Shown here: in pieces, positions 4,181 through 51,975 of the stretch | Position numbering within the stretch: the stretch's first letter is position 1 | Layout of the letters: each line of letters starts with the position of its first letter | Source of the DNA: Octopus sinensis | Taxonomy: Eukaryota | DNA: 64,000 nucleotides | Assembly: GCF_006345805.1 (NCBI RefSeq) | Contig: NC_042998.1 | Coordinates: 165,478,001-165,542,000 of the forward strand | Direction: 5' to 3' | Translations under genes and position numbers: made by a program | The notes under the pieces: generated by a model | Told to the model about the DNA's origin: nothing | The model's database searches: none | Seen by the model: the letters and a program-made list of their open reading frames with translations, nothing else

Positions 4181-4226
<46 letters not shown>

Positions 4227-7083: not shown

Positions 7084-7116
<33 letters not shown>

Positions 7117-7201
7117 TATATACATATACATATATATATACAAATATATATATACATATATATATATATACATATACATATATATATACAAATATATATA
7201 T

Positions 7202-7261
<60 letters not shown>

Positions 7262-7309
7262 GTATATCTAGGTGCTATATATCTATATCTTTATCTATCG
7301 ATACATTTA

Positions 7310-7340
<31 letters not shown>

Positions 7341-7342
7341 AC

Positions 7343-7420
<78 letters not shown>

Positions 7421-7497
7421 CACATATGTATGTATGTATCCGTATGTATAAAAGTTTGTATGCATCATGTATGTATATACCCACATAATGTGTGTGT

Positions 7498-7536
<39 letters not shown>

Positions 7537-8745: not shown

Positions 8746-9160
8746 CCTTTTTACTTTTACTTTTACTTGTTTCAGTCATTTGACTGCGGCCATGCTGGAG
8801 CACCGCCTTTAGTCGAGCAAATCGAGCCCGGGACTTATTCTTTGTAAGCCCAGTACTTATTCTATCGGTCTCTTTTTGCCGAACCGCTAAGTGACGGGGA
8901 AGTAAACACACCAGCATCGGTTGTCAAGCAATGCTAGGGGGACAAACACAGACACACAAACACACACACATACATATATATATATATACATACATACGAC
9001 AGGCTTCTTTCAGTTTCCGTCTACCAAATCCACTCACAAGTCTTTGGTCGGCCCGAGGCTATAGTAGAAGACATTTGCCCAAGATGCCACGCAGTGGGAC
9101 TGAACCCGGAACCATGTGGTTGGTTAGCAAGCTACTTACCACACAGCCACTCCTGCGCCT
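8746..9160 (-). mobile_element. tRNA-derived SINE, family A, full length
   Basis: Same head, body and tail as 3931-4390; the head reads AGGCGCAGGAGTGGCTGTGTGGTAAGTAGCTTGC on the minus strand. Confidence 0.9.
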
Positions 9161-11568: not shown

Positions 11569-11616
<48 letters not shown>

Positions 11617-11662
11617 TGTATACACATAGTCATATATATGAAGATACATACACATATGTGTT

Positions 11663-11713
<51 letters not shown>

Positions 11714-11736
11714 ATGTTGTGTGTATGTACGTGTAT

Positions 11737-17619: not shown

Positions 17620-18815
17620 TGCGTGTCAAAGTTTAGTTTGCAGAATGCAATCGGACGTGAAGTCAATTTTGAAGCTCGCTACGCAATAATTTTGTGTTAA
17701 ATTCGGCAAAACCATACAAAAATTTATGAAATGCTCCATATTACTTATTAACTTGTATGAGCCGAACATCTGTTGTTCACTGGCACCAGAGGCCACACAG
17801 AGCAAGTCCCCAGAGAGGTTGATGATGATTCCTTTTTCGACAGCAAAGTCACCATCTATATTCACTGGGTTCCTTTTTGACAGACGTTAAACAAAGAATA
17901 CCGTAAATCCTCGAGTATAGTCCGCCCTTGATTATAATACGCAGGGGTTTTTTTTAGGGGACTGTACCTCTGAAAAACCTAAACCTTGTGTATAATACGC
18001 ACCACTTCTCTAACATGAGTCGTGCATAATTAAACCAGCAGCACCTAGTCGAGCAAACACTTTCGCGCATGCGTAATACAATTATGGGGATGTGCTTAAC
18101 TGTTATATGGGAATATAAATACGTTTGCAAATTGTTTTTGTTACATGTTTATTCTGTGTTCTGAATACTTTTATTTTAATAAATGTTGCTTACTGCAAGT
18201 TATGGATGATTCTTTTATGACTTCATTGCTTTCAGGCTTAGCTTAAAGTATTTTCGCGCCCACATCACAAAATGCGTCTGAATAAACATTGCCGGAGAGC
18301 AAATAGAGACTCGGACATTGCTTAGAAAATATTTTTCATTTTTAACCTCGTATATAGTACGCACTAGGGATTTTGACCTTGAAATTTTGGGAAACAAATG
18401 CGGATTATACTCGAGGATTTACGGTACTTTGTGGAAGTTTTGAGGGTGTTCGGGAAGAGATTTCGTTGCTAAACGCCAGAGAACCTACACTAGGACAACG
18501 CGCCAGTCCACAATTCCATCCTGATAGCCAACTACTTGATAGAGACGGGCATCAAAACTATCCCTCGCGCTCCATACAGTCTAGACCGTGTTCCCTGTGA
18601 CCTTTGGTTGTTTTCTAAGATGAAGATGAAGATGAGGAAGCTGGACGTCTTCACTTTGAAAGACTTCAACGAGGCCTTTTCAAAGTGGCTGGAACGCAAC
18701 AAATGCATTCAAGTGAAAGGATTCTACTTTGAAGGATATTAGAGTTATATATTTCTTCAAAATTAATTAATGTTTCTCCTGAAAATGTCTTTAAAAACTT
18801 CTGGAATTTGAGCCG
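17620..18815 (+). mobile_element. Degenerate mariner element interrupted by a MITE
   Basis: N-terminal ...FCVKFGKT... remnant; ...NKE-Y|YFVEVL split by the insertion; C-terminal DNAPVHNSILIANYLIETGIKTIPRAPYSLDRVPCDLWLFSKMK...KWLERNKCIQVKGFYFEGY* (YSPDL-like motif). Confidence 0.85.
17901..18424. mobile_element. MITE with TA target-site duplication (pogo/Tigger-like by TSD and TIR style)
   Basis: TIRs TA-CCGTAAATCCTCGAGTATA and TATACTCGAGGATTTACGG-TA. Removing the element and one TA restores the mariner frame AAAGAATACTTTGTGGAA (KEYFVE). Confidence 0.9.
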
Positions 18816-20647: not shown

Positions 20648-20976
20648 CTTTTTACTATTTTACTTGTTTCAGTCATTTGACTGCAACCATCTCAAGGGTT
20701 TAGTCCATACTGGAGCACCGCCTTTAGCCAGGCAAATCGACCCCAGGACTTATTCTTTGTAAGCCTAGTACTTATTCTTTGTAAGCCTAGTACTTATTCT
20801 ATTGATCACTTTCCACAAACCGCTAAATTACGGGGACGTAAACACACCAGTATCGGTTGTCAAGTGATGTTGGTGGGGGGGGGAAACAAACACAGACACA
20901 CAAACACACACATACATATATAAATATACATATATACGACGGGCTTCTCTCATTTTCCGGCTACCAAATCCACTCA
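20648..20976 (-). mobile_element. SINE family A, truncated at a (TAA)n tract
   Basis: The tail and body match family A. It ends abruptly at CAAATCCACTCA, followed by (TAA)n and a Dong-like fragment; the head is missing. Confidence 0.85.
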
Positions 20977-21934: not shown

Positions 21935-22636
21935 TATATATTATATGTATATATATATGTGTGTGTGTGTGTATCACAATGTCGATATTAATACTAATAA
22001 CGTTTTCAAATATGAACCATAGAATTAGGTTCTTTCCCACGGATACAGTGAGGAATACCCTTGTATGTATACACACACACACACGCACACCACACACACA
22101 CACACACACACACACATACATATATATATATATTTATATATATATTTATATATATATTTATATATATATTTATATATTATATATGCACATACACACACAC
22201 ACATATGATTAAGGCAATGTCAATATTAATAACAACAAAGTTTTCAAATGTTGTGAAACCATAGAATTAGGTTCCTGTCCCAAGGATACAAGTGAGGAGG
22301 AATACCCTTGCTGTGATATCTAACACTCTTAAGAAGATCAACTATTACAATGGATATCTCTTGTTGCAGACTTCTGCACCGTTAGTAGGTCGTTTTTTTT
22401 CTAGGTCGTTCAGTTTCTAATTAGGTCAATTAGTATTCCATTAAATCACTCGTTCTTTTCCTTTATTGAATTCTTCTACAAGTTTATTCAGTTCAATTCT
22501 CGTGTCTGCTAATCTATCATCTTCCTGTTTCCCAGCCTAAAAATATTTCTTATATTCTCCTCGGGTTATCTCGCCAATATATCGATCATATATTCTTCCC
22601 TTTTTATTCTCTTATTTCCTCTCATTGTTTTTCTCT

Positions 22637-24451: not shown

Positions 24452-25001
24452 ATAAATACCCTGATTCAGTACCAGGCAGTGGCTCTCATGGCTTCTAATC
24501 TTAACTGATTGGAAGTGTTATCGAGTATATATTTTTCTTGGTATAAAAGATGGGCTACAGCAGATACCACAGATTTGCTCGTCAGTTCTTTGACCTTAAC
24601 CATTTAAGCATGTCCCTTGGCAGCTGACGATGACCTTAGTGCATCTCTGATCACGAACAGAAGTAGTGGGGGAGTATCATAGCCATGTGTTGAGAGGGAT
24701 TCTTTGGGGTTTGAATACTTCACCTCTGGAAACATGGCTATTTCGTTCAACATCCTTAAACAACCCTTATTTAGGTACTTTTTGAGCATTGGGCTACTTG
24801 ACCTAAGGAAAATTCTAACTGGGCCCCACCTGCAAGGTCAAACGCTGTTTATCTCGATATCAGATCGCCTTGTCGCGCATATATATTGTTGTGATGCATG
24901 TGCCTGGTGCCCCTTATCGGACGGGTAGTCATGATGGGTATACTGGGCTTTGTATATTTTACCTCAGTGTCACTTTGTTGGCATGCACTGATCTCTCACT
25001 C
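24452..25001 (+). mobile_element. Non-coding interspersed element in a TAA/TGA microsatellite (family E)
   Basis: ~550 bp between (TGA)n and (AAT)n. Its last ~110 bp (ATGCATGTGCCTGGTGC...CTCACTCA-ATAATAAT) recur inverted at 44730-44842. Confidence 0.65.
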
Positions 25002-25015
25002 AATAATAATAATAA

Positions 25016-25059
<44 letters not shown>

Positions 25060-25060
25060 A

Positions 25061-26533
25061 TTTATGATGAAGCCCAAGTCAGTTCCCTCGTTGATACGGT
25101 GTATACCTTCAGTACTGATATCAGAATGGAGTTCGGACTGAGAAAGTGTGGGGTGTTAGTCTTGAAGAGAGGCAAAATCAAATGTATGGACGGGCTAACG
25201 ATACCGTCGGGGAAGGCTAAGAAGCAGATAGAAGAGACGGGCTATAAGTACTTGGGGATTTTGGAAATTGATAAATTGATGGAGAAAGAGATGACAGAAA
25301 AATTTAAGGTGGAGTACTTGCGCAGACTAAGAATGATCCTTAAATCGAAATTAAACGGATGGAATGAGATCGAAGCTATCAATACCTGGGCGGTTTCACT
25401 CCTTAGATATGGAGCAGGAGTAATCGCATGTACAGTAGAACAAAACAGCTTAAACAGAAAGACAAAGAAGTTGCTAACTAGATATAGGTCACTCCACCCA
25501 AAAAGTGACACAGGCAGACTATATATACCAAGAAAAAGAGGGGGAAGAGAACTTATTGGATGCGAACCCAGCATTAGAGCAGAAGAAAGCAATATAGTAT
25601 GGTATGTAAAAAATGCCACAGAACCGCTATTATTAGAAGATCAGGTGTGTGTAGGATGAAAGATTATAAAAATAAAGCACTATACAAGAAATTGAGAACG
25701 AATGAAACTAAAAATAGGTGGGTAAAGAAAAGAATGCATGGTCAATTTCATAGGGATATTGAAGATAAGACAGACAGAGAAAAAAGATGGTTGTGGATGA
25801 CTAAAAGTGATTTAAAACCTGAAACGGAGGCTCTAATCTATGCTGCCCAAGAGCAAGCGCTAAGAACAAACTACATAAACTACAGAATAGACAACACATC
25901 AGAAAGTGATAATTGCAGAATCTGTGGACAAAACGGTGAAACCGTATGGCATACTACCAGCCATTGTACGTCACACGCCCAGAAGGAATATAAGAGACGC
26001 CACGACAATATGGACACTTTGCAACAAGGGACTTGATAATGAAAAAAATTGGTACGACCACAAACCTGAAGTCATCGTCGAAAATAGAAATGCAAAGATC
26101 CTATGGGATTTTATGATTCAGTGCGACCATGGGATAGAGAATAGGAAGCCGGACATAGTCTTAACGGAGAAAGAAAACAAACTATGCTGGATCATTGATA
26201 TAGCCCGTCCAGCTGACAACAAGGTATGCGATAAGGAAGAAAGAAAAGTTGCTTGAAAAGTTAGCTTGGAAAGTAAAGCAGTTGTGGTCGATGAAAAAGG
26301 TAACAGTAATACCAATAATTGTCGGACCCCTGGGAACAGTGAGAAAAAATCTGGAGAAGTACGTGGAACAAATAGGGGTTGCAATAACGATGGAGCACTT
26401 GCAGAAAATAGCACTGCTTGGAGCCGCTCGAATACTCCGGAAGGTGCTCGAAAAATAAGGTGTTACCTTAGTTCACTGGTAGTGAACAGCTGACACTGTA
26501 GTACATCTCCAGCGTTAGAAGCTGTGCAAAGGC
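25061..26533 (+). mobile_element. 5'-truncated R4/Dong-like LINE (RT C-terminal half, CCHC knuckle, restriction-like endonuclease), pseudogenised
   Basis: MEFGLRKCGVL..., YKYLGILE, AINTWAVSLLRYGAG, RLYIPRKRGGR, CRICGQNGETVWHTTSHC (CCHC), YKRRHDN, KILWDFMIQCD...RKPDIVL...CWIIDIARPAD, VIPIIVGPLG. Broken by stops and frameshifts; preceded by (TAG)n and followed by (GAA)n. Confidence 0.92.
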
Positions 26534-27243: not shown

Positions 27244-27622
27244 GTAGGCAAGTAGCTTGCTTACCAACCACATGGTTCCGGTTTCAGTCCCACTGCGCGG
27301 CACCTTGGGCAATGTATCTTCTACTACAGCTTCGGGCCGACCAAAGCCTTGTGAGTGGATTTGGTAGGTGGAAACTGAAAGAAGCCCGTCGTATATATGT
27401 ATATGTGTATTTATATATGTGTCTTTGTGTGTCTGTGTTTCTCCCCCAACATCGCTTAACAACCGATGCTGGTGTGTTTACATTCCCGTAACTTAGCAGT
27501 TCGGCAAAAGAGACCGATAGAATAAGTACTAGGCTTACAAAGAATAAGTCCTGTGCTCGATTTGATCGACTAAAAGGCGGTGCTCCGCAGTCAAACGACT
27601 GAAACAAGTAAAAGAGAGTAAA
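27244..27622 (+). mobile_element. SINE family A
   Basis: GTAGCTTGCTTACCAACCACATGGTTCCGGTTTCAGTCCCACTGCG... through the tail CGACTGAAACAAGTAAAAGAGAG. Confidence 0.88.
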
Positions 27623-30935: not shown

Positions 30936-31395
30936 AACACACACACGCACGCGCACGCACACACACACACGCGCACACGCACACGCACGCGCACGCGCGC
31001 ACACACACACATGTATATAAATGATGATTGCCTCATTTTGTCAGATGATAGCCGTCTCACATTCAGCTTGATTGTTCGTCTGCGGATATAACTTTTCACG
31101 CCACGCATCCATTGCTATAAAACTATAAAATATAAATGGATCAAGACATGAAATGATAGTGAAACATTTGCACGCTACTGGATTTAAGTGACAAACACTT
31201 ATAGAACACTTTTACCACTCTCTCGGTCGCCATAACAGTTTTCAGTGACAAGCATCGCAAGATGGCTGCTACTTTTTTGACTTCAAGTTTTATGTCAGAG
31301 CATCTTTCATCTAGAGGAGCTGCCTTACCTCTGGGGATTCTGAACTTGTAGGGAGCATGTAGTCATCATTTAATTACCATATGTGTGTGTGTGTT

Positions 31396-31447
<52 letters not shown>

Positions 31448-31456
<9 letters not shown>

Positions 31457-31715
31457 GAGGGCATTATACATACATGCCAGGAGGCATTCTACATACACGC
31501 CATACGCTAAGAGGGACAATCAGTCATTTCTACCAAAAATATTACTAATCCCACCGAATGCAATTTTTCAAAGAAAGACATTTAAAATATATAGACCTGT
31601 ATCACAGTGATTTCATACTTACGTAATCATCAGCAGGCCTGAATATACTATAAATAAACAACGACCCTGCTTCGCTTAAGCCGATCAGCTAACTGATCAA
31701 CATCAACGAAGAACA
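31448..31715 (-). repeat. Inverted partial copy of the 480-bp unit (left arm of a fold-back)
   Basis: 31448-31698 is the reverse complement of ~31716-31965, with a 17-nt spacer (31699-31715). The left end merges into (TA)n. Confidence 0.95.
31593..31640 (-). ncRNA. Type I hammerhead ribozyme in the inverted unit copy
   Basis: Reverse complement AGGCCUG-CUGAUGA-UUACGUAAGUAU-GAAA-UCACUGUGA-U-A-CAGGUCU; predicted cleavage 3' of position 31600 on the minus strand. Confidence 0.8.
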
Positions 31716-34700
31716 GATCAGTTAGCTGATCGGCTTAAGCGAAGCAGGGTCGTTGTTTATTTATAGTATATTCAGGCCTGCTGATGATTACGTAAGTATG
31801 AAATCACTGTGATACAGGTCTATATATTTTTAAATGTCTTTCTTTGAAAAATTGCATTCGGTGGGATTAGTAATATTTTTGTAGAAATGACTGATTGTCC
31901 CTCTTAGCGTATGGCGTGTATGTAGAATGCCTCCTGGCATGTATGTATAATGCCCTCTATATATAAATTAATATGTTCAATAAGAAATAATTATTTTCGA
32001 AATTTTTTCTCTTATGAGGTTTTTACGCTATCTACCTGACAATTTCTTGTTTGTTAAGTTTTCCTTATTAAGTAGTTGTCCTAATTGCTAAATTTTTATT
32101 CCGAAAAAACTTTTCCTCTCCCGAAATGCAATTCGTAAAAGTTTGCCATTCATCCGGATATAGTATATATAAGCCCACCCATGTGCTTCGTTGATGTTGA
32201 TCAGTTAGCTGATCGGCTTAAGCGAAGCAGGGTCGTTGTTTATTTATAGTATATTCAGGCCTGCTGATGATTACGTAAGTATGAAATCACTGTGATACAG
32301 GTCTATATATTTTTAAATGTCTTTCTTTGAAAAATTGCATTCGGTGGGATTAGTAATATTTTTGGTAGAAATGACTGATTGTCCCTCTTAGCGTATGGCG
32401 TGTATGTAGAATGCCTCCTGGCATGTATGTATAATGCCCTCTATATATAAATTAATATGTTCAATAAGAAATAATTATTTTCGAAATTTTTTCTCTTATG
32501 AGGTTTTTACGCTATCTACCTGACAATTTCTTGTTAAGTTTTCCTTATTAAGTAGTTGTCCTTAATTGCTAAATTTTTATTCCGAAAAAACTTTTCCTCT
32601 CCCGAAATGCAATTCGTAAAAGTTTGCCATTCATCCGGATATAGTATATATAAGCCCACCCATGTGCTTCGTTGATGTTGATCAGTTAGCTGATCGGCTT
32701 AAGCGAAGCAGGGTCGTTGTTTATTTATAGTATATTCAGGCCTGCTGATGATTACGTAAGTATGAAATCACTGTGATACAGGTCTATATATTTTTAAATG
32801 TCTTTCTTTGAAAAATTGCATTCGGTGGGATTAGTAATATTTTTGTGTAGAAATGACTGATTGTCCCTCTTAGCGTATGGCGTGTATGTAGAATGCCTCC
32901 TGGCATGTATGTATAATGCCCTCTATATATAAATTAATATGTTCAATAAGAAATAATTATTTTCGAAATTTTTTCTCTTATGAGGTTTTTACGCTATCTA
33001 CCTGACAATTTCTTGTTAAGTTTTCCTTATTAAGTAGTTGTCCTTAATTGCTAAATTTTTATTCCGAAAAAACTTTTCCTCTCCCGAAATGCAATTCGTA
33101 AAAGTTTGCCATTCATCCGGATATAGTATATATAAGCCCACCCATGTGCTTCGTTGATGTTGATCAGTTAGCTGATCGGCTTAAGCGAAGCAGGGTCGTT
33201 GTTTATTTATAGTATATTCAGGCCTGCTGATGATTACGTAAGTATGAAATCACTGTGATACAGGTCTATATTTTTTAAATGTCTTTCTTTGAAAAATTGC
33301 ATTCGGTGGGATTAGTATAATATTTTTGGTAGAAATGACTGATTGTCCCTCTTAGCGTATGGCGTGTATGTAGAATGCCTCCTGGCATGTATGTATAATG
33401 CCCTCTATATATAAATTAATATGTTCAATAAGAAATATTATTTTCGAAATTTTTTCTCTTATGAGGTTTTTACGCTATCTACCTGACAATTTCTTGTTAA
33501 GTTTTCCTTATTAAGTAGTTGTCCTTAATTGCTAAATTTTTATTCCGAAAAAACTTTTCCTCTCCCGAAATGCATTCGTAAAAGTTTGCCATTCATCCGG
33601 ATATAGTATATATAAGCCCACCCATGTGCTTCGTTGATGTTGATCAGTTAGCTGATCGGCTTAAGCGAAGCAGGGTCGTTGTTTATTTATAGTATATTCA
33701 GGCCTGCTGATGATTACGTAAGTATGAAATCACTGTGATACAGGTCTATATATTTTTAAATGTCTTTCTTTGAAAAATTGCATTCGGTGGGATTAGTAAT
33801 ATTTTTGGTAGAAATGACTGATTGTCCCTCTTAGCGTATGGCGTGTATGTAGAATGCCTCCTGGCATGTATGTATAATGCCCTCTATATATAAATTAATA
33901 TGTTCAATAAGAAATAATTATTTTCGAAATTTTTTTCTCTTATGAGGTTTTTACGCTATCTACCTGACAATTTCTTGTTAAGTTTTCCTTATTAAGTAGT
34001 TGTCCTTAATTGCTAAATTTTTATTCCGAAAAAACTTTTCCTCTCCCGAAATGCAATTCGTAAAAGTTTGCCATTCATCCGGATATAGTATATATAAGCC
34101 CACCCATGTGCTTCGTTGATGTTGATCAGTTAGCTGATCGGCTTAAGCGAAGCAGGGTCGTTGTTTATTTATAGTATATTCAGGCCTGCTGATGATTACG
34201 TAAGTATGAAATCACTGTGATACAGGTCTATATATTTTTAAATGTCTTTCTTTGAAAAATTGCATTCGGTGGGATTAGTAATATTTTTGGTAGAAAGACT
34301 GATTGTCCCTCTTAGCGTATGGCGTGTATGTAGAATGCCTCCTGGCATGTATGTATAATGCCCTCTATATATAATTAATATGTTCAATAAGAAATAATTA
34401 TTTTCGAAATTTTTTCTCTTATGAGGTTTTTACGCTATCTACCTGACAATTTCTTGTTAAGTTTTCCTTAAAGTAGTTGTCCTTAATTGCTAAATTTTAT
34501 TCCGAAAAAACTTTTCCTCTCCCGAAATGCAATTCGTAAAAGTTTGCCATTCATCCGGATATAGTATATATAAGCCCACCCATGTGCTTCGTTGATGTTG
34601 ATCAGTTAGCTGATCGGCTTAAGCGAAGCAGGGTCGTTGTTTATTTATAGTATATTCAGGCCTGCTGATGATTACGTAAGTATGAAATCACTGTGATACA

Positions 34701-37358
34701 GGTCTATATATTTTTAAATGTCTTTCTTTGAAAAATTGCATTCGGTGGGATTAGTAATTTTTGGTAGAAATGACTGATTGTCCCTCTTAGCGTATGGCGT
34801 GTATGTAGAATGCCTCCTGGCATGTATGTATAATGCCCTCTATATATAAATTAATATGTTCAATAAGAAATAATTATTTTCGAAATTTTTTCTCTTATGA
34901 GGTTTTTACGCTATCTACCTGACAATTTCTTGTTAAGTTTTCCTTATTAAGTAGTTGTCCTTAATTGCTAAATTTTTATTCCGAAAAAACTTTTCTCCCG
35001 AAATGCAATTCGTAAAAGTTTGCCATTCATCCGGATATAGTATATATAAGCCCACCCATGTGCTTCGTTGATGTTGATCAGTTAGCTGATCGGCTTAAGC
35101 GAAACAGGGTCGTTGTTTATTTATAGTATATTCAGGCTGCTGATGATTACGTAAGTATGAAATCACTGTGATACAGGTCTATATATTTTTAAATGTCTTT
35201 CTTTGAAAAATTGCATTCGGTGGGATTAGTAATATTTTTGGTAGAAATGACTGATTGTCCCTCTTAGCGTATGGCGTGTAGTAGAATGCCTCCTGGCATG
35301 TATGTATAATGCCCTCTATATATAAATTATATGTTCAATAAGAAATAATTATTTTCGAAATTTTTTCTCTTATGAGGTTTTTACGCTATCTACCTGACAA
35401 TTTCTTGTTAAGTTTTCCTTATTAAGTAGTTGTCCTTAATTGCTAAATTTTTATTCCGAAAAATCTTTTCCTCTCCCGAAATGCAATTCGTAAAAGTTTG
35501 CCATTCATCCGGATATAGTATATAAGCCCACCCATGTGCTTCGTTGATGTTGATCAGTTAGCTGATCGGCTTAAGCGAAGCAGGGTCGTTGTTTATTTAT
35601 AGTATATTCAGGCCTGCTGATGATTACGTAAGTATGAAATCACTGTGATACAGGTCTATATATTTTTAAATGTCTTTCTTTGAAAAATTGCATTCGGTGG
35701 GATTAGTAATATTTTTGGTAGAAATGACTGATTGTCCCTCTTAGCGTATGGCGTGTATGTAGAATGCCTCCTGGCATGTATGTATAATGCCCTCTATATA
35801 TAATTAATATGTTCAATAAGAAATAATTATTTTCGAAATTTTTTTCTCTTATGAGGTTTTTACGCTATCTACCTGACAATTTCTTGTTAAGTTTTCCTTA
35901 TTAAGTAGTTGTCCTTAATTGCTAAATTTTTATTCCGAAAAAACTTTTCCTCTCCCGAAATGCAATTCGTAAAAGTTTGCCATTCATCCGGATATAGTAT
36001 ATATAAGCCCACCCATGTGCTTCGTTGATGTTGATCAGTTAGCTGATCGGCTTAAGCGAAGCAGGGTCGTTGTTTATTTATAGTATATTCAGGCCTGCTG
36101 ATGATTACGTAAGTATGAAATCACTGTGATACAGGTCTATATATTTTTAAATGTCTTTCTTTGAAAAATTGCATTCGTGGGATTAGTAATATTTTTGGTA
36201 GAAATGACTGATTGTCCCTCTAGCGTATGGCGTGTATGTAGAATGCCTCCTGGCATGTATGTATAATGCCCTCTATATATAAATTAATATGTTCAATAAG
36301 AAATAATTATTTTCGAAATTTTTTCTCTTATGAGGTTTTTACGCTATCTACCTGACAATTTCTTGTTAAGTTTTCCTTATTAAGTAGTTGTCCTTAATTG
36401 CTAAATTTTTATTCCGAAAAAACTTTTCCTCTCCCGAAATGCAATTCGTAAAAGTTTGCCATTCATCCGGATATAGTATATATAAGCCCACCCATGTGCT
36501 TCGTTGATGTTGATCAGTTAGCTGATCGGCTTAAGCGAAGCAGGGTCGTTGTTTATTTATAGTATATTCAGGCCTGCTGATGATTACGTAAGTATGAAAT
36601 CACTGTGATACAGGTCTATATATTTTTAAATGTCTTCTTTGAAAAATTGCATTCGGTGGGATAGTAATATTTTTGGTAGAAATGACTGATTGTCCCTCTT
36701 AGCGTATGGCGTGTATGTAGAATGCCTCCTGGCATGTATGTATAATGCCCTCTATATATAAATTAATATGTTCAATAAGAAATAATATTTTCGAAATTTT
36801 TTCTCTTATGAGGTTTTTACGCTATCTACCTGACAATTTTTGTTAAGTTTTCCTTATTAAGTAGTTGTCCTTAATTGCTAAATTTTTATTCCGAAAAAAC
36901 TTTTCCTCTCCCGAAATGCAATTCGTAAAAGTTTGCCATTCATCCGGATATAGTATATATAAGCCCACCCATGTGCTTCGTTGATGTTGATCAGTTAGCT
37001 GATCGGCTTAAGCGAAGCAGGGTCGTTGTTTATTTATAGTATATTCAGGCCTGCTGATGATTACGTAAGTATGAAATCACTGTGATACAGGTCTATATAT
37101 TTTTAAATGTCTTTCTTTGAAAAATTGCATTCGGTGGGATTAGTAATATTTTTGGTAGAAATGACTGATTGTCCCTCTTAGCGTATGGCGTGTATGTAGA
37201 ATGCCTCCTGGCATGTATGTATAATGCCCTCTATATATAAATTAATATGTTCAATAAGAAATAATTATTTTCGAAATTTTTTCTCTTATGAGGTTTTTAC
37301 GCTATCTACCTGACAATTTCTTGTTAAGTTTTCCTTATTAAGTAGTTGTCCTTAATTG

Positions 37359-37360
<2 letters not shown>
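31716..37360 (+). repeat. Head-to-tail tandem array of a ~480-bp non-coding unit (~11.7 copies); hammerhead-containing satellite / retrozyme-like
   Basis: Unit spacing measured at the ribozyme: 483, 481, 482, 480, 482, 476, 475, 477, 481, 479, 477 bp. Copies differ almost only by short (mostly 1-4 nt) indels. No ORF of 60 aa or more in the track. Ends at ...TTAATTGCT followed by (AT)n. Confidence 0.97.
31774..37094 (+). ncRNA. Twelve type I hammerhead ribozyme motifs, one per repeat unit
   Basis: Motif AGGCCUG-CUGAUGA-U-UAC(GUAA)GUA-U-GAAA-UCAC(U)GUGA-U-A/CAGGUCU at 31774-31821, 32257-32304, 32738-32785, 33220-33267, 33700-33747, 34182-34229, 34658-34705, 35134-35180, 35610-35657, 36091-36138, 36570-36617, 37047-37094. 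Stem I has 7 bp and extends a further 7 bp past a UC bulge. Confidence 0.82.
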
Positions 37361-37398
<38 letters not shown>

Positions 37399-38418
37399 GC
37401 ACTCACACACAAGTATGATCTCTCCCAAATAAACAGTTACTAAGTTTAGAGAAGGCGACACTGGAAACTGTAATTCTAAATATCACTATCAAGGTGGGAT
37501 TGCTATGGCAGGAAGGATTTTGTTCATAAATCTTATTGCTGAAGTATGCTTGTCCTGTGGTTGAACATTAACAAGATTTGTCCTGTGGTTAAATATTAAC
37601 AAGACGTCTTGCTGTCTTCACCCGGATACTGGGTGTCTTTAGCGAAGAATGGCTTCTTCATTCGGATCCGAATGTTCCTGCCATGGAATATCAAACGTCC
37701 TCCTCCTTTTCTCCCTGTCATTTCCAGAACTTATATAAAAGAAGAGCCTATTCTCTTATGATGAACCTTTCTCTTTCTTTTTTCTTTTTTCTTTCTTCTC
37801 TCTCTTTTTCTTTTTTCTTTTTTCTCTCTTTTTTAATTTTTCTTTTTTCTCTCTCTTTCTCTCTCAAGACACACATAGGAACATATACACATGTATTTAT
37901 TGTTTTATTTCATTTTTTTTTCATATTTTCGTAGCATTTTTAGACTTGATTTGGAAGAGTAAAGTTCCTAAATCCATATTCGAGGTTTCTAGACTTTCAC
38001 AGTCTCATTATCAAGAAGAGAATATATTAGGCCTCAGTGTATTTTCTTATATATAAGTACTTCGTTTATTACTAAATACTTTGTAGCAATCACACGCTAT
38101 ACACCTTCCTTCCAAGCACTGTTGTAAACAGCGGAAGTGAGCTAGAACGTTAAAACTTGGTGCGCATGCACAGCAGAGTTCAAGGTCTACTCGTGCCAAG
38201 CAGCTTTACTCTGTGTGCTTTAGCATCATTACTATGACAACAGTCCGGATACTTATTGATCAGACCACACATATAAATTAGATCCAGACATTTCAATGAG
38301 TATATATATGTTGATATATTGCAAGTATTACAAGTTTCATTGTTTTGTTTGATTTTTTTTCCAGGACATTATAAGCAGCCAACATGATTCGGTATAATTG
38401 TTAAAGAATATATATATA

Positions 38419-38594: not shown

Positions 38595-38975
38595 AAGTAG
38601 CTTGCTTACCAGCCACGTGGTTCCGGGTTCATTCCCACTGCGTGGCACCTTGGGCAAGTGTCTTCTACTATAGCCTCGGGCCGACCAAAGCCTTGTGAAT
38701 GGATTTGGTAGACGGAAACTGAAAGAAGCCTGTCGTATATATGTATATATATATGTATGTGTGTGTATTTGTTTGTGTATCTGTGTTTGTCCCCCCAACA
38801 TCGCCTGACAACCGATGCTGGTGTGTTAACGTCCCCGTAACTTAGCGGTTCGGCAAAAGAGACCGATAGAATAAGTACTAGGCGTACAAAGAATAAGTCC
38901 TGGGGTCCATTTGATTTGCTCGACTGAGGTGGTGCTCCAGCATGGCCGCAGTCAAATGACTGAAACAAGTAAAAA
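38595..38975 (+). mobile_element. SINE family A
   Basis: AAGTAGCTTGCTTACCAGCCACGTGGTTCCGGGTTCATTCCCACTGCG...GCAGTCAAATGACTGAAACAAGTAAAAA. Confidence 0.88.
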
Positions 38976-40699: not shown

Positions 40700-40965
40700 T
40701 CTTTTACTTGTTTCAGTTATTGGACTGCAGCCATGCTAGGGCACCGACTCAAAGGGTTTAGTCAGATAAATCGGCTTCAGCCTGCTACCTATTGTAACGA
40801 CAGGCTTCTTTCAGTTTCCGTCTACCAAATCCACTCATAAGGCTTTGGTCGCCCCGAGGCTATAGAAGAAGACACTTGTCCTAGATGCCATACAATGGGA
40901 CTGAACCCAGAATCATGTGATTGAGAAACAAACTTCCTTCCACGCAACGACCCCAGCGCGCACCT
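40700..40965 (-). mobile_element. SINE family A with internal deletion
   Basis: The tail CTTTTACTTGTTTCAGTTATTGGACTGCAGCCATGC is joined to CGACAGGCTTCTTTCAGTTTCCGTCTACC...GGGACTGAACCCAG. Confidence 0.75.
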
Positions 40966-40980: not shown

Positions 40981-41323
40981 TGGTGGTGACCCCCTTCGGT
41001 CAGACACTAACCATGGGTTTGCACCTAGAGATTTACCCTCTGAGGCACAAGTCTGGGCAAGGTTGTTTTATGGAAGACCAGCAGTCGCCCATGCATACCG
41101 GCCTCCCCTCTCCACGTCACCGATGTTTTCCAAGGGAAAGGCAAGGGTCGATACAGCTTGGCACCTGTGACGTCGCAACTCATTTCTACAGCTGAGTGAA
41201 CTGGAGCAACGTGAGATAAAGTGTCTTGCTCAAGAACACAACACGCACCCCGGTCCGGGATTCGAGCTCACAACCTCACGATCGTAAGCTTGACGCTCTA
41301 ACCACTGAGCCACGTGCCTTCAC
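40981..41323 (-). mobile_element. tRNA-derived SINE family D
   Basis: Minus-strand head GTGAAGGCACGTGGCTCAGTGGTTAGAGCGTCAAGCTTACGATCGTGAGGTTGTGAGCTCGAATCCCGG (tRNA-like A/B boxes), followed by GTTGTGTTCTTGAGCAAGACACTT. Confidence 0.85.
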
Positions 41324-41969: not shown

Positions 41970-42297
41970 TATATACATATATATATATACATATATATAT
42001 GTATATATGTGTATGTATATATATATATGCATATAAATGTATATATATATATATGTATGTACATATATACATGTATGTATATAAGTGTATATGTTTGTGT
42101 GTGTGTGCGTGCGTGCGTTTGTGTGTGTGATATTCATACCTATAGAAATACACACATGTACCCTGCACACACATATGTGTGTTTTTGTGTATGTGTGCTT
42201 GTGTGCGTCAGTGTATGTATATGTGTGCAGCGTGCGTACGTGTGTGTGTGTATATATATATATATACATACACACACATATATATACATACACACAC

Positions 42298-42421
<124 letters not shown>

Positions 42422-45626: not shown

Positions 45627-46240
45627 CGAGGTGGTATCAAAAAGGTCCAGGACTAATTACGTTTGATAACAAAAAAACTTATTTACCTAGGTTTTAATAT
45701 CATCTCTTCCGTAACAGTCACCTTGCGCAGCAATACACCGGTCCCAGCGTTCCTGCCACTTATGGGATCTGTCGTTTCCGTAAGCGAGTCGAAGACATTC
45801 TGCTATTTGCTCTGGATCTCGACAACGGTGTTAAAATGGTGACCTTTGAGCTGCATTTTCATCTTGGGGAAGGGATGGAAGCTGGCAAGTGCTAAATCTG
45901 GTGAATAGGGCAGGTGCGGAAGCGATACCATGCTGTTTTGGCGGGAAGCGCACGAGTGAGGACAGCTCAGTAACAGGAGACATTGTAGGCGTGAAGAATC
46001 CCATTGTTCACACTCCACAGATCCGGTCACTTTCATAGAAGGTCCTCCTTCAAGCGCTTCAAAAAGTCGCGGTAGAACTCTCGATTGACGGTCAGGCTCT
46101 GGGGGACGAATTTTTGATGCACAATATCACATCTTCGAGGGTGACATATGTGGCAGGTCTTCTAGATTGCTCATCGTCTTCCAGAGTCGTTCTTCCGCTT
46201 TTAAAGCGCCCATGTCATTCGAAACACTGCTAAATTCATA
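45627..46240 (-). mobile_element. Internally deleted mariner element
   Basis: Minus strand RFKSGRTTLEDDEQSRRPAT (N-terminal) and LPHLPYSPDLALASFHPFPKMKMQLKGHHFNTVVEIQ (YSPDL motif). TIR-like TA-CGAGGTGGTATCAAAAAG at 45625. Confidence 0.85.
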
Positions 46241-49854: not shown

Positions 49855-50682
49855 CTACTATGTAATTGACCTTTATTAAGACAAAATAGCTATTAGAATG
49901 ACAGTTAAATAAGTGTTTTTTCCCTTATTTAACGGCCATTCTAATAGCTCTTTTGTTTGAACATAGAGTTCCGCGTTGACCGATTGGTTCCGTTCGAGCA
50001 ATTCGTAACGGATAATCCTTTCCCAGTCCCACATCGTTTTACGTGGATGAAGATCTTGTTTCTTACGCTGCTTCATATTGATGTTCAGGCACCATTTTTC
50101 GTCGCCAGTAACGATTTGGTAAAGAAATCATTGCTGTGTCCATGAGTTGAGTGGTGACGAACAAGCAAACCAACGAAGATTGTGGCTCGTTGATTTTTAT
50201 TGTTGTCTCTTAAAGCATGCGGAACCCATGCAGTGTGAGAGCATTCCATTTCCTCTGCCAGTTCCCTTGTCGTTTGACGAGAATTTTCGTGCAAAAGTTG
50301 AAATAATCGCTCTTCATCGAAATCAACTGGATGGCCAGAGCGAGGTGCGTCTTTGCGGTCAAAATTTCCATTTTTGAACTTGGCATACCAACCACGAGCG
50401 GTTCTTTCAGCTATGGCACCCGATCCATACACAGCACAAATGTCGCGAGCAGCTTTTGCAACCTTAGAACCTTGATTAAAAGCAAAAAGGAGGTGTCGAA
50501 AATGCTCGTTGTTCTTAACTTCACATTCCATTTTAATGATCTGAAAATAAACAAAAATTAACTAAAATTAACTCGAAAAAAAAAAGCAAAATAGATTCCA
50601 AAATGATTCAAAAATAGAATTCCCCAAAACATAGATTCCAAAATTTTAAAAAACGGCGGGAACTTAGTTGCCAACCCAAAAT
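49855..50682 (-). mobile_element. Degenerate mariner (Mos1/Hsmar-like) element
   Basis: ORF 50085-50531: EHFRHLLFAFNQGSKVAKAARDICAVYG...TARGWYAKFKNGNFD..DAPRSGHP...QTTRELAE...WVPHAL. The frameshifted continuation gives IVTGDEKW and WDWERIIRYELLERNQSVNAELY. TIR-like end at ~50650-50682. Confidence 0.92.
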
Positions 50683-50796: not shown

Positions 50797-51263
50797 ATAA
50801 CATAAGGGGCGTTAACCATCCGAATATGGCTAGGGACAGGGCAGGGCGGTGGGGGTGTTACTGATGCATTTAGCCCCAGGCGATCATCAACGTCACCAGA
50901 AGGGCTGACGCCATCACGGAGTCCTTTGGCTGCAAAGGGAGATCATTCCCCGAAGAAGCGGATGCTACATACGGACCCAGGTTTCAAGGTGTTTGCCTCT
51001 CGTCATAGCCTGCACAGGGAGTCGTTCGTCGAGGGGCGGTGCCTGCCATACGTTGACGAGAGGCAAACACCTTGAAACCTGGGTCCGTATGTGGCATCCG
51101 CTTATTCGGGGAATGATCTCCCTTTGCAGGCTAGAGGACGCCGTGATGGCGTCAGCCCTTCTGGTGACGTTGATGATCGCCTGGGGCTAAATGCATCAGT
51201 AACACCCCCACCGCCCTGCCCTGTCCCTAGCCATATTCGGATGGCTAACGTCCCTTATGTTAT
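50797..51263. mobile_element. GC-rich fold-back element (MITE-like), ~200-bp near-perfect inverted arms with a ~45-bp spacer
   Basis: ATAACATAAGGGGCGTTAACCATCCGAATATGGCTAGGG... is the reverse complement of ...CCCTAGCCATATTCGGATGGCTAACGTCCCTTATGTTAT along the whole arm. Confidence 0.9.
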
Positions 51264-51762: not shown

Positions 51763-51790
51763 GTACATACATGACACACACACACACACG

Positions 51791-51823
<33 letters not shown>

Positions 51824-51827
51824 CGGA

Positions 51828-51975
51828 ATTCTATCGGTTTCCCTCTAGCAAATCCACTCACAAGGCTTTGTTAGATCTGAGGCTATAGTAAAAGAAACTT
51901 CCCCAAGGTTCCACGCAGTGGGACTGAACCTAGAATTATGTGGTTGAGAAGCAAGCTTCTTAGCACATAGCCATG
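51828..51975 (-). mobile_element. SINE family A head fragment
   Basis: CAAATCCACTCACAAGGCTTTG...CCAAGGTTCCACGCAGTGGGACTGAACC. Confidence 0.8.

What the first reader, a model, noticed from the sequence alone, without database searches (positions are those of the whole stretch)
31448..37360. Hammerhead-ribozyme tandem array: candidate retrozyme / self-processing circular-RNA system with a ~480-nt unit
Seen directly: 12 head-to-tail units plus one inverted copy, each containing AGGCCUG-CUGAUGA-U-UAC(GUAA)GUA-U-GAAA-UCAC(U)GUGA-UA/CAGGUCU. This gives the full conserved core, a 7-bp stem I extended by 7 more bp past a UC bulge, a GNRA-capped stem II and an AUA triplet. Predicted cuts fall after 31814, 32297, 32778, 33260, 33740, 34222, 34698, 35173, 35650, 36131, 36610 and 37087, releasing 475-483-nt monomers starting CAGGUCU. 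Established: tandem type I hammerhead repeats (newt satellite 2, Schistosoma Sm-alpha, Dolichopoda pDo500, metazoan retrozymes) self-cleave to monomers that can circularise and are thought to spread using RTs in trans. Inference: this is such an element, non-coding, recently amplified, and of a family I do not recognise. Caveat: the base of stem II is U.U rather than the usual G-C.
Basis: partly seen in the sequence, partly recalled or inferred. Interest (0 to 1): 0.93.

Follow-up and report, generated by a model that had tools for sequence, protein, structure and literature searches.

The report
Tandem hammerhead-ribozyme repeat (candidate animal retrozyme)
A young, non-coding 480-bp repeat carrying a variant self-cleaving hammerhead RNA motif sits in a TA microsatellite with the insertion footprint of a Penelope-like retroelement; this is a new family of an already known kind of animal mobile element, and its cleavage activity is still untested.

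Summary
There are 11.8 head-to-tail units of 475-483 bp (31716-37361) plus an inverted partial copy (31448-31715). The motif has every invariant core base, an A15.1-U16.1 pair, A17, and a robust helix I. Helix II is very weak (U.U base plus 3 AU-rich pairs plus GUAA). Helix III is a near-palindrome that is unstable as a hairpin but stable as a dimer. A tested axolotl retrozyme ribozyme (HHR_Amex2) has the same U.U architecture and cleaves, best as a dimer. A structural descriptor gives 0 hits in 96 Mb of random sequence. Against this, Rfam's hammerhead models and a model I built from four validated retrozyme hammerheads do not recognise the motif significantly. The copies are near-identical, so there is no covariation evidence. 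Best reading: a recently inserted non-LTR retrozyme of an undescribed family, probably a dimer-dependent cleaver. It is a new member of a known kind, of moderate interest. The host lineage is not established.

The parts
31402..31447 (.). (TA)n microsatellite, left half of the presumed target site
   Evidence: TRF row 31402-31456, period 2; junction ...TATATA|TTATATATAGAGGGC. Further out lies (TG)n; on the right side the mirror image (CA)n-like tract.
31448..31715 (-). Inverted, 5'-truncated partial unit (monomer positions 366->481->1->153), abutting the first direct unit
   Evidence: Inverted-repeat arms 31448-31587/32311-32450 (100%) and 31581-31715/32182-32316 (99%); blastn to the consensus dimer 99.3% over 268 nt.
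31586..31649 (-). Complete hammerhead motif inside the inverted copy
   Evidence: Core at 31600-31633 on - with 0 mismatches; the full 64-nt motif is identical to the direct copies.
31699..31715 (.). 17-nt segment present only in the inverted arm; it is the spacer of the palindrome formed with the first direct unit
   Evidence: Arms 31581-31698 and 31716-31833, 99% complementary, 17 nt apart. This palindrome explains the sub-threshold MIR5070 hits on both strands.
31716..37361 (+). Direct head-to-tail array, 11.8 units of 475-483 bp; it starts at monomer position 383 and ends at 274
   Evidence: TRF; unit lengths; boundaries. GC 33%, longest stop-free stretch 54 codons.
31765..31828 (+). Hammerhead 1 (extended helix I - core - helix II - helix III - A17 | helix I); predicted cut after 31814
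32248..32311 (+). Hammerhead 2; predicted cut after 32297
32729..32792 (+). Hammerhead 3; predicted cut after 32778
33211..33274 (+). Hammerhead 4; predicted cut after 33260 (1-nt deletion in the distal 3' strand of helix I)
33691..33754 (+). Hammerhead 5; predicted cut after 33740
34173..34236 (+). Hammerhead 6; predicted cut after 34222
34649..34712 (+). Hammerhead 7; predicted cut after 34698
35125..35187 (+). Hammerhead 8; predicted cut after 35173; helix I 5' strand has a 1-nt deletion (GGCCTG>GGCTG), so it fails the descriptor
35601..35664 (+). Hammerhead 9; predicted cut after 35650
36082..36145 (+). Hammerhead 10; predicted cut after 36131
36561..36624 (+). Hammerhead 11; predicted cut after 36610
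37038..37101 (+). Hammerhead 12; predicted cut after 37087
32166..32173 (+). TATATAAG box (first of 11, one per unit, monomer positions 350-357), a possible internal promoter element. The direct array begins at the unit position 33 nt downstream of its first T
   Evidence: Positions of all 11 copies; spacing. Promoter function is inference only.
37362..37395 (.). (TA)n microsatellite, right half of the presumed target site; no poly(A) tail at the junction
   Evidence: TRF row 37360-37395; junction ...CCTTAATTGC TA|TATATA.

Best explanation
This is a recently inserted, non-autonomous, non-coding retroelement of the metazoan 'non-LTR retrozyme' kind, from a family not described before. SHOWN: the window holds 11.8 near-identical 480-bp units head to tail, preceded by an inverted 5'-truncated copy, and the whole is embedded in a (TA)n tract. 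Each unit encodes on the + strand a type-I hammerhead with all invariant core bases, A15.1-U16.1, A17 and a strong helix I. Its helix II is a weak U.U-based stem capped by GUAA, and its helix III is palindromic. The + strand monomer RNA is strongly self-paired, and helix I holds its two ends together. INFERRED: the array is transcribed on the + strand by Pol II, possibly from the TATATAAG box in each unit. Pol III is unlikely because the + strand has five runs of 5 or more T per unit. Hammerheads of neighbouring units pair through helix III into a double hammerhead and cut after AUA, giving ~480-nt monomers with 5'-OH and 2',3'-cyclic phosphate ends. An RtcB-type tRNA ligase circularises these. 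The RNA is reverse-transcribed and integrated in trans by a Penelope-like element (RT plus GIY-YIG endonuclease). That route explains the tandem copies, the inverted 5'-truncated copy and the microsatellite target. Both outer junctions lie on TA-containing sites of the unit, as expected if (TA)n target ends primed cDNA synthesis by microhomology.
For: Array and identical cores. Descriptor specificity: 0 hits in 38 Mb of shuffles plus 58 Mb of Markov sequence. Helix I pairing probability is 0.9-0.99 in every context tested, and the hammerhead fold at -11.3 kcal/mol lies within about 2 kcal/mol of the local MFE, so it passes the published threshold of below -5 kcal/mol. The U.U at the base of helix II has an active precedent. 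Axolotl HHR_Amex2/Ax353 parses as CUGAUGA-U-GCC-CACUA-GGC-U-GAA-ACACGUGU-A and cleaves 22% in 1 h as a monomer and efficiently as a dimer. In the calibration, all four validated retrozyme hammerheads also have a helix III hairpin at about 0 kcal/mol and a palindromic helix III with dimer energies of -4.6 to -13.4; the value here is -10.1. The hammerhead-constrained fold of -6.7 lies within their range of -6.3 to -11.6. The double hammerhead is the cofold MFE, -34.5 against 2 x -13.4. Dimeric action in tandem repeats is the stated norm for metazoan type-I hammerheads. Monomer RNA: + strand -130.9 kcal/mol (z -6.5) against - strand -99.5 (z -4.9); as circles -124.2 against -95.5, with 16 against 9 G.U pairs; nucleotides 1-7 pair with the helix I 5' strand. 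The unit is non-coding and has 33% GC. [quoted passage not shown] All of these are seen here. The inverted copy lies at the 5' end relative to the hammerhead-sense strand. Retrozymes are reported to derive from PLE pLTRs, and their unit sizes of 51-972 bp cover this one. The array is young: its units are essentially identical, while the window's interspersed SINE-like repeat copies are 74-91% identical. A second hammerhead-like family in the same window shows that the genome hosts such elements.
Against: No Rfam hammerhead family matches at gathering thresholds or at E<=10, even on a 106-nt query, although RF00163 does report another site in the window at 19.5 bits. A covariance model built from four validated retrozyme hammerheads gives 12.8 bits, E about 0.26, and ranks the motif below four other sites. 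The nearly invariant G10.1-C11.1 pair is replaced by U.U. The rest of helix II is only UAC/GUA, at -0.5 kcal/mol with pairing probability about 0.25, the weakest of the five ribozymes compared. There is no covariation evidence, because all copies are identical and no homologue could be reached anywhere. No PLE RT or GIY-YIG remnant lies in the window. The 30-40 bp 'tail' described for PLE insertions is not evident. Transcription, cleavage and circles are all untested. Tandem arrays and edge inversions can also arise by DNA-level mechanisms.
Confidence: 0.65

Rival explanations
1. An ordinary satellite or locally amplified tandem duplication, formed by unequal exchange or replication slippage, whose unit happens to contain, or retains in decayed form, a hammerhead-like string that does not cleave. 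The edge inversion would be a DNA-level fold-back rearrangement.
For: Two covariance-model tests fail. The U.U at 10.1/11.1 and an AU-only 3-bp helix II at -0.5 kcal/mol are suboptimal. No conservation data exist. My rough analytic estimate (inference) is that a loose descriptor would give about one to a few chance hits per Gb, so a multi-Gb genome could hold a handful.
Against: The descriptor gave 0 hits in 96 Mb. A chance hit would also have to fall inside a tandem repeat of retrozyme-like size, on the strand whose RNA folds best, with helix I extended to 13-14 bp and helix II capped by a GNRA loop. The array would also need to carry the three-part PLE insertion signature. The same U.U architecture is active in axolotl.
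Confidence: 0.2
2. Not an independent retrozyme family but the non-coding terminal part (pLTR) of an autonomous Penelope-like element, amplified as a multi-copy partial tandem. The hammerhead would then be the PLE's own.
For: PLE pLTRs carry type-I hammerheads, and PLE insertions are tandem/inverted and target microsatellites. Xenopus retrozyme families are sister to PLE pLTRs.
Against: No RT or GIY-YIG coding sequence lies in or next to the array, or anywhere in the window. Animal PLE hammerheads are described as 'minimal' variants, with no or tiny helix III, a long helix II, a short helix I and a conserved G10.1-C11.1. This motif instead has a long helix I, a short helix II and a 4-5 bp palindromic helix III. 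Twelve full units are more typical of retrozyme multimers.
Confidence: 0.1
3. Assembly artefact: the copy number, and possibly the inverted copy, were created or distorted by long-read assembly of a repeat.
For: Inter-unit differences are almost all 1-nt indels in short runs, typical of uncorrected long-read error. Craig et al. note that tandem/inverted PLE structures cause assembly problems.
Against: The array is anchored in unique, non-symmetrical flanks. The inverted piece is short (268 nt), precisely bounded and 99% identical to the unit. The two outer junctions fall at different unit positions, 153 and 274. An artefact could change the number of units but not the existence of the repeat or of the motif.
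Confidence: 0.04
4. A hairpin-forming MITE or miRNA precursor locus (the MIR5070-like hit at 31650-31764).
For: Rfam MIR5070 scores 77.1 and 74.9 bits on the two strands.
Against: The scores are below the gathering score of 100. The family is a plant one. The equal hits on both strands coincide exactly with the palindrome made by the inverted copy and the first direct unit, so this is a generic long-hairpin match.
Confidence: 0.01

Closest known systems
Axolotl retrozyme Rtz_353 with hammerhead HHR_Amex2 (Cervera & de la Pena 2020, PMC7229834)
   Same: Tandem non-coding repeat with a type-I hammerhead. Both have core CUGAUGA, a U.U mismatch at the base of helix II followed by 3 base pairs and a small loop, a palindromic helix III, and A at position 17. 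It cleaves weakly as a monomer and well as a dimer.
   Different: Its unit is 350 bp against 480 bp here. Its helix II pairs are GC-rich (-3.2 against -0.5 kcal/mol), its loop 2 is CACUA against GUAA, its helix I is 6 bp against 7+7 bp, and the host is a vertebrate. I saw no sequence similarity outside the core. There are about 60,000 copies there; the copy number here is unknown.
Mussel (Mytilus galloprovincialis) retrozymes, 350-390 bp
   Same: AT-rich tandem non-coding repeats with a type-I hammerhead that lacks the archetypal loop1-loop2 contacts, a 3-4 bp AU-containing helix II and a palindromic helix III. They are expressed as abundant circRNAs and circularised by RtcB-type ligase in vitro.
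   Different: It has a canonical G10.1-C11.1 and a GUC cleavage triplet, and it is active as a monomer (about 0.1 per min). There is no sequence similarity to this unit.
Penelope-like element insertions and their pLTR hammerheads (Craig et al. 2021, PMC8557442; Cervera & de la Pena 2014, PMC4209133)
   Same: Head-to-tail partial tandems, an inverted 5'-truncated copy adjacent at the 5' end, insertion into microsatellites including (TA)n, no discernible TSD, and hammerheads with a palindromic helix III that act as dimers.
   Different: This element has no RT/GIY-YIG ORF. Its hammerhead is not the 'minimal' PLE form and lacks G10.1-C11.1. No 30-40 bp tail was seen.
Classical hammerhead satellites: newt satellite 2 (~330 bp), Schistosoma Sm-alpha, Dolichopoda pDo500
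   Same: Tandem genomic repeats transcribed into multimers that are processed by a type-I hammerhead. pDo500 has a unit of similar size; that figure is my own knowledge, and the family is named in PMC2837043.
   Different: Their hammerheads match Rfam RF00163-type consensus, whose consensus is Schistosoma-like. This one does not.
Plant LTR retrozymes
   Same: Non-autonomous retroelements whose RNA is cut by hammerheads and circularised.
   Different: They have type III hammerheads within LTRs, plus PBS, PPT and 4-bp TSDs, and use Ty3/Gypsy-type mobilisation. None of these features is present here.

Membership tests
Hammerhead ribozyme, type I | Invariant core C3 U4 G5 A6 N7 G8 A9 ... G12 A13 A14 | tested here: met
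   CUGAUGA ... GAA is present in all 13 copies with 0 mismatches.
Hammerhead ribozyme, type I | A15.1-U16.1 pair and a non-G nucleotide at position 17 before the scissile bond | tested here: met
   GAA-A...U-A|C, cleavage triplet AUA.
Hammerhead ribozyme, type I | Open-ended helix I enclosing the motif (type I topology) | tested here: met
   AGGCCUG/CAGGUCU, 7 bp, pairing probability 0.9-0.99, extended by 6-7 bp past a UC bulge.
Hammerhead ribozyme, type I | Helix II closed by a loop and starting with the highly conserved G10.1-C11.1 pair | tested here: not met
   Position 10.1/11.1 is U.U; the remainder is UAC/GUA plus GUAA, at -0.5 kcal/mol and P about 0.25. Conservation of G10.1-C11.1 is stated. 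There is an active exception with U.U, axolotl HHR_Amex2.
Hammerhead ribozyme, type I | Helix III (hairpin, or intermolecular in dimeric hammerheads) | tested here: inconclusive
   The hairpin (4 bp plus triloop) scores 0 to -0.2 kcal/mol with P 0.01-0.02. The intermolecular 5+5 bp helix scores -10 to -12 kcal/mol. Four validated retrozyme hammerheads show the same pattern.
Hammerhead ribozyme, type I | Recognition by curated or independent covariance models | tested here: not met
   No Rfam hammerhead family matches at GA or at E<=10. The model R1 built from 4 validated hammerheads gives 12.8 bits, E about 0.26. RF00163 does work in this tool: 19.5 bits at 4866-4910.
Hammerhead ribozyme, type I | Compensatory changes in the helices among homologues | tested here: inconclusive
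   All 13 copies are identical in the motif, and no homologue was reachable.
Hammerhead ribozyme, type I | Site-specific self-cleavage giving 5'-OH and 2',3'-cyclic phosphate | not testable with these tools
   Needs in vitro transcription and end mapping.
Metazoan non-LTR retrozyme | Tandem repeat of about 50-970 bp with a complete type-I hammerhead in at least 2 consecutive units, motif MFE below -5 kcal/mol | tested here: met
   Criterion and size range. Here: 479-bp period, 12 motifs, 11 passing the descriptor, MFE -13.4 and hammerhead fold -11.3.
Metazoan non-LTR retrozyme | Non-coding, GC below 50%, no LTR/PBS/PPT organisation | tested here: met
   Longest stop-free stretch 54 codons, GC 33%, plain head-to-tail units. 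PBS and PPT were not searched for formally.
Metazoan non-LTR retrozyme | Monomer RNA predicted to be stable and highly self-paired | tested here: met
   z = -6.5; circular MFE -124.2 kcal/mol; 64% of bases paired; more stable than the complementary strand.
Metazoan non-LTR retrozyme | Expressed as unit-length linear and circular RNA | not testable with these tools
   No transcriptome is available.
Metazoan non-LTR retrozyme | Multiple genomic loci and co-occurrence with autonomous PLEs in the genome | not testable with these tools
   Only one 64-kb window was available. It holds no second locus of this family and no PLE domains.
Penelope-like-element type insertion | Partial or multicopy head-to-tail tandem | tested here: met
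Penelope-like-element type insertion | [quoted passage not shown] | tested here: met
   31448-31715 on the - strand abuts 31716 and lies at the 5' end of the hammerhead-sense strand.
Penelope-like-element type insertion | Insertion into a microsatellite, TSD not discernible | tested here: met
   (TA)n lies on both sides, and the outer junctions fall at TA-containing unit sites.
Penelope-like-element type insertion | 30-40 bp 'tail' extension at one end | tested here: not met
   Both outer junctions pass directly from unit sequence into (TA)n. The only extra sequence is a 17-nt spacer at the inverted/direct junction, and it is unit sequence.
Penelope-like-element type insertion | ORF with PLE RT and GIY-YIG endonuclease (autonomous element) | tested here: not met
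   None in the unit or in the window. The element would have to be non-autonomous.
Viroid-like / deltavirus-like circular RNA replicon | Ribozymes in both polarities; RNA-only replication | tested here: not met
   The unit's - strand has no ribozyme motif, and the element is encoded in DNA.
MIR5070 microRNA precursor | Score at or above Rfam gathering threshold on one strand | tested here: not met
   77.1 and 74.9 bits against GA 100, on both strands, at the palindromic junction.

The most novel reading that the evidence does not exclude
The locus is a very recent integration of retrozyme cDNA by Penelope-like-element machinery, twin-primed from the two ends of a (TA)n target. That would account for the inverted 5'-truncated copy ending at the unit's own UAUAUAUA tract. 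It would make this one of the clearest single-locus structural footprints that animal retrozymes are mobilised by PLEs. Its hammerhead is a natural attenuated variant (U.U at 10.1/11.1, AU-only helix II, palindromic helix III) that can cut only as a dimer. Multimeric transcripts would then be processed while circular monomers are protected. The same solution was reached independently in axolotl HHR_Amex2. The array's 5' end, 33 nt downstream of a TATA box in the unit, would mark the transcription start of the template RNA.
Probability: 0.3. Interest if true: 0.55.

Novelty: new member of a known kind. Interest (0 to 1): 0.38.

Why it matters
Hammerhead-bearing tandem repeats are a widespread source of abundant small circular RNAs in animals, but two points remain open: how they move, and why so many carry 'weakened' ribozymes. 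This locus is young, since its units are essentially identical, and it has cleanly resolved ends. It shows in one place the three-part insertion signature described for Penelope-like elements. So far the link between PLEs and retrozymes has rested on co-occurrence and sequence relatedness. The locus also offers a second, independent example of the U.U helix II variant. That makes it a convenient substrate for testing dimer-only cleavage and the role of the 10.1-11.1 pair. If the host proves to be a cephalopod, it would extend retrozymes to a group for which I found no report. It is not a new kind of system.

Tried and rejected
1. Rfam at gathering thresholds (whole window), at E<=10 on 7 kb, and on 106 nt gave no hammerhead family for the array motif. 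The snoZ7 hit (14.3 bits, E 2.7) only reflects the UGAUGA 'C box'-like string and was rejected. The MIR5070 hits are the palindromic junction and were rejected.
2. Search for homologous copies: blastn of the unit against the rest of the window found only low-complexity matches. The exact 46-mer and a degenerate hammerhead pattern gave 0 in metagenome contigs. The exact 27-mer gave 0 in viral contigs and genome contigs. Exact look-up of two unit ORFs found nothing on record. A homology search with the longest stop-free translation returned no candidate. A literature search for the core string gave only irrelevant 12-mer matches.
3. Host identification: exact look-ups of the mariner and LINE ORFs found nothing on record. 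The best hits for the LINE RT fragment are 70% identical and lie in an unnamed ENA assembly, ERZ25066843. That assembly shares only the LINE with the window, at 71.5% nt identity, and none of its SINE-like repeats, so it is not a close relative. Mariner hits at 64-83% are scattered over insects, mites, spiders, nematodes and Octopus spp., which is uninformative.
4. PLE remnants: Pfam on 10 selected ORFs and on all non-repetitive stop-free segments of the window, about 8,000 aa, found only mariner HTH/DDE fragments and a weak zf-RVT.
5. The covariance-model hit at 13087-13133 (-) also has a U.U-type helix II. However, its helix I is imperfect and its surroundings show no similarity to the unit beyond chance, so I treated it as chance. 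The hit at 41114-41173 lacks the core and was rejected.
6. tRNA-derived SINE heads: ARAGORN found none.
7. Within-array conservation test: 0 variants fall in the 34-nt core against about 2.5 expected, which is not significant.

Full report
OBSERVATION. Tandem Repeats Finder reports one array at 31716-37361 with period 479, 11.8 copies and 98% matches. The 34-nt string CTGATGATTACGTAAGTATGAAATCACTGTGATA occurs 12 times on the + strand and once on the - strand (31600-31633). All copies have zero mismatches, and none is expected by chance. Cut-to-cut monomers are 475-483 nt. Of the 36 variable alignment columns between monomers, 34 are single-base indels in short homopolymer or dinucleotide runs and only 2 are substitutions. 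The units are therefore essentially identical. Most of the '2% divergence' looks like long-read assembly noise, and the array holds no covariation information. One unit (cut 35173) has a 1-nt deletion in helix I and one (33260) has a deletion in the distal helix I strand. The inverted element is a 268-nt partial unit (31448-31715) at 99% identity. It contains a complete hammerhead and directly abuts the first direct unit, forming a palindrome with a 17-nt spacer.

ANATOMY OF THE MOTIF. Read in standard hammerhead numbering, each unit gives the following. Helix I is AGGCCUG/CAGGUCU (7 bp), extended by 6-7 more pairs beyond a UC bulge. The core is C3 U4 G5 A6 U7 G8 A9. Helix II is U10.1.U11.1 plus UAC/GUA, capped by GUAA. 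Then come G12 A13 A14, helix III A15.1-UCACUGUGA-U16.1, A17, and the cut before C1.1. Every invariant core position is present. The realistic hairpin is 4 bp with a CUG triloop, and it is marginal: 0 to -0.2 kcal/mol, pairing probability 0.01-0.02. Helix II is also weak (-0.5 kcal/mol, P about 0.25), whereas helix I forms with P 0.9-0.99 in every sequence context tried. The 11-nt helix III is a near-palindrome. Two copies make a 5+5 bp helix of -10 to -12 kcal/mol, and the 'double hammerhead' is the minimum-energy structure of two 64-nt motifs, at -34.5 against 2 x -13.4 kcal/mol.

IS IT MORE THAN CHANCE, AND IS IT A HAMMERHEAD? A generic type-I descriptor was used: CUGANGA; helix II of at least 3 bp with a base mismatch allowed; GAAA; helix III; U-H; helix I of at least 5 bp. 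It finds only these copies in the window. It found none in 300 dinucleotide shuffles (38 Mb) or in 58 Mb of Markov sequence. My rough analytic estimate (inference) is about one to a few loose hits per Gb, so a large genome could contain a handful by chance. A chance hit would also have to lie in a retrozyme-sized tandem repeat, on the better-folding strand, with a 13-14 bp helix I and a GNRA cap. On the other side, no Rfam hammerhead family matches at gathering thresholds or at E<=10, even on a 106-nt query. This is not a tool failure, because RF00163 reports another site in the window at 19.5 bits.

I then took the four experimentally tested retrozyme hammerheads printed in Supplementary Table 2 of Cervera & de la Pena 2020 (coral Amil224, mussel Mg353, axolotl Ax353 and Ax330). 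I built a covariance model from them alone. It scores the array motif at 12.8 bits, E about 0.26, which is not significant. With four seeds, two of which share helix I, that model is strongly sequence-specific. The result therefore shows that the motif is a divergent variant; it does not show that the motif is not a hammerhead.

CALIBRATION AGAINST VALIDATED RIBOZYMES. [quoted passage not shown] It cleaves 22% in 1 h as a monomer and efficiently as a dimer. Its sequence parses as CUGAUGA-U-GCC-CACUA-GGC-U-GAA-ACACGUGU-A|. That is the same architecture as CUGAUGA-U-UAC-GUAA-GUA-U-GAA-AUCACUGUGAU-A| here. I computed the same quantities for all five ribozymes:
- The helix III hairpin is 0.0 kcal/mol in every one, including the coral ribozyme, which cleaves at about 0.8 per min as a monomer.
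- The helix III dimer scores -13.4, -13.3, -10.3 and -4.6 in the validated four, against -10.1 here.
- The hammerhead-constrained fold scores -11.6, -6.5, -6.3 and -9.0, against -6.7 here.
- Helix II scores -5.8, -1.9, -3.2 and -2.9, against -0.5 here.
The only outlying feature is thus the weak, AU-only helix II. Cervera & de la Pena 2014 state that most metazoan type-I hammerheads have an unstable palindromic helix III and act as dimers in tandem transcripts. They also state that G10.1-C11.1 is highly conserved.

THE UNIT AS AN RNA. The unit is non-coding, with a longest stop-free stretch of 54 codons, and has 33% GC. The + strand monomer folds to -130.9 kcal/mol (z = -6.5 against shuffles). 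The complementary strand folds to -99.5 (z = -4.9). As circles the values are -124.2 and -95.5, with 16 against 9 G.U pairs. In the fold, nucleotides 1-7 pair with the helix I 5' strand, so the two ends of a cleaved monomer are held together. This fits the 'stable, highly self-paired' retrozyme RNAs of the literature. Only one polarity carries a ribozyme. The + strand has five runs of 5 or more T per unit, which argues against Pol III. Each unit has a TATATAAG box at monomer positions 350-357, 11 copies in all.

THE INSERTION. In monomer coordinates, with 1 as the base after the cut, the inverted copy spans 366->481->1->153. The direct array starts at 383 and ends at 274. The whole lies between (TA)n tracts (31402-31447 and 37362-37395), flanked further out by (TG)n and a (CA)n-like tract. 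There is no poly(A) tail. Both outer junctions fall on TA-containing sites of the unit...CUCUAUAUAUAA on the left and ...GCUA on the right.

Craig et al. 2021 describe Penelope-like-element insertions as highly 5'-truncated and organised in partial tandems. [quoted passage not shown] They also report a strong insertion bias toward microsatellites, including (TA)n, which makes target-site duplications undiscernible. Non-autonomous derivatives give multicopy head-to-tail insertions. All of these are present here, and the inverted copy is at the 5' end relative to the hammerhead-sense strand. The described 30-40 bp 'tail' is not evident. A 2026 preprint argues from co-occurrence and pLTR phylogeny that animal retrozymes are non-autonomous PLE derivatives. 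It gives unit sizes of 51-972 bp, and 75% of families have at most seven repeats. This array fits within that picture and adds a structural footprint. My reading is inference. Target ends in (TA)n primed cDNA synthesis on the unit's UA-rich sites, the second priming event producing the inverted copy. The template was either a circular monomer copied round and round, or an uncleaved multimeric transcript. The direct array begins 33 nt downstream of the first T of the TATA-like box, so a transcript 5' end is an alternative explanation for that boundary.

CONTEXT. The window is AT-rich and microsatellite-rich, with decayed transposons. These are mariner fragments (49879-50561, 18494-18739, 45806-46126), a LINE 3' fragment with a weak zf-RVT match (24895-26253), and a ~380-bp SINE-like repeat in at least 8 copies of 74-91% identity. 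No PLE RT or GIY-YIG domain is present. Compared with these old repeats, the array is young. I found no paper that links retrozymes or hammerheads with cephalopods.

A SECOND HAMMERHEAD-LIKE FAMILY. The model built from validated ribozymes ranked two other sites above the array motif: 4866-4910 and 51047-51091, both on +. They read CAUACG-UUGACGA-GAGG-CAAAAA-CCUU-GAA-AC-UAUA-GU-C|CGUAUG. This is the canonical metazoan shape: helix I 6 bp, helix II 4 bp, helix III 2 bp plus a tetraloop, and a GUC site. It has U in place of the invariant C3 and a G10.1.U11.1 wobble. Rfam Hammerhead_1 gives 19.5 bits (GA 34) for the first. The two copies lie in flanks only 62-71% identical, yet they differ only in loops 2 and 3. 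All 37 stem and core positions are identical, with P about 3e-6 or less under flank-level divergence. A third copy lies inverted about 40 nt upstream of the second and is truncated inside the hammerhead, which is again a tandem/inverted arrangement. This shows that the genome carries hammerhead-bearing repeats, which raises the prior for the array. The U3 core is unexplained.

VERDICT. The best explanation, at confidence about 0.65, is a recently inserted non-LTR retrozyme of an undescribed family. Its hammerhead is a U.U/weak-helix-II variant that probably cleaves as a dimer, and it was mobilised by PLE-type machinery. The main rival, at about 0.2, is an inert satellite with a fortuitous or decayed motif. 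The finding is a new member of a known kind. It is of moderate interest, far below the 0.93 first assigned, because such elements have been known since 1987 and are now catalogued across animals.

Noticed in passing
window 4866-4910 (+), 51047-51091 (+), inverted truncated copy with core at about 50981-51007 (-); repeat arms 50813-51005 / 51037-51247; related repeat 4856-5064: A second, unrelated hammerhead-shaped motif sits in an interspersed repeat. It has canonical type-I geometry and a GUC site, but U3 in place of the invariant C3 and a G10.1.U11.1 wobble. Rfam Hammerhead_1 gives 19.5 bits (GA 34). Stems and core are 37/37 identical between copies whose flanks are 62-71% identical, and all 5 differences lie in loops 2 and 3. 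One pair is arranged head-to-head, with the inverted copy truncated inside the motif.
   Followed up: partly
window 31650-31764, both strands: Sub-threshold Rfam MIR5070 (a plant miRNA family) matches of 77 and 75 bits. They are explained by the long palindrome between the inverted partial unit and the first direct unit, so this is not a miRNA gene.
   Followed up: yes
window 3948-4367, 8761-9137, 20653-20976, 27250-27616, 38595-38974, 40797-40919, 51778-51961, 59831-60208: A ~380-bp SINE-like interspersed repeat occurs in at least 8 copies of 74-91% identity. ARAGORN finds no tRNA-like head. It serves as an age yardstick: it is much older than the array.
   Followed up: partly
window 49879-50561 (-), 18494-18739 (+), 45806-46126 (-), 6042-6314 (+): Decayed mariner/Tc1-type transposase fragments (HTH_48 at 1.7e-17, partial DDE). 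Protein relatives at 64-83% are spread over insects, mites, spiders, nematodes and Octopus spp., so they do not identify the host.
   Followed up: partly
window 24895-26253 (+): A frameshifted 3' fragment of a LINE-type reverse transcriptase with a weak zf-RVT match, interrupted by a (GTT/ATT)-type microsatellite. The best relatives (70% aa, 71.5% nt) lie in the unnamed ENA assembly ERZ25066843.
   Followed up: partly
window 31377-31447 and 37362-37430; also e.g. 7051-7550, 11543-11728, 22071-22184, 42251-42421: Compound microsatellites of the self-complementary form (TG)n(TA)n(CA)n or (AC)n(AT)n(TG)n are frequent in the window. The array sits in the middle of one, so the joined flanks would restore such a tract.
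   Followed up: no
window 13087-13133 (-): An isolated string with a CUGACGA core, a U.U-based helix II and A17 but an imperfect helix I (model R1, 14.6 bits). It shows no similarity to the array unit beyond chance and is probably fortuitous.
   Followed up: yes
window 31716-37361: Differences between units are almost all 1-nt indels in short homopolymer or dinucleotide runs. This points to uncorrected long-read error in the assembly of this repeat, so the exact unit lengths (475-483) and possibly the copy number should not be over-interpreted.
   Followed up: partly
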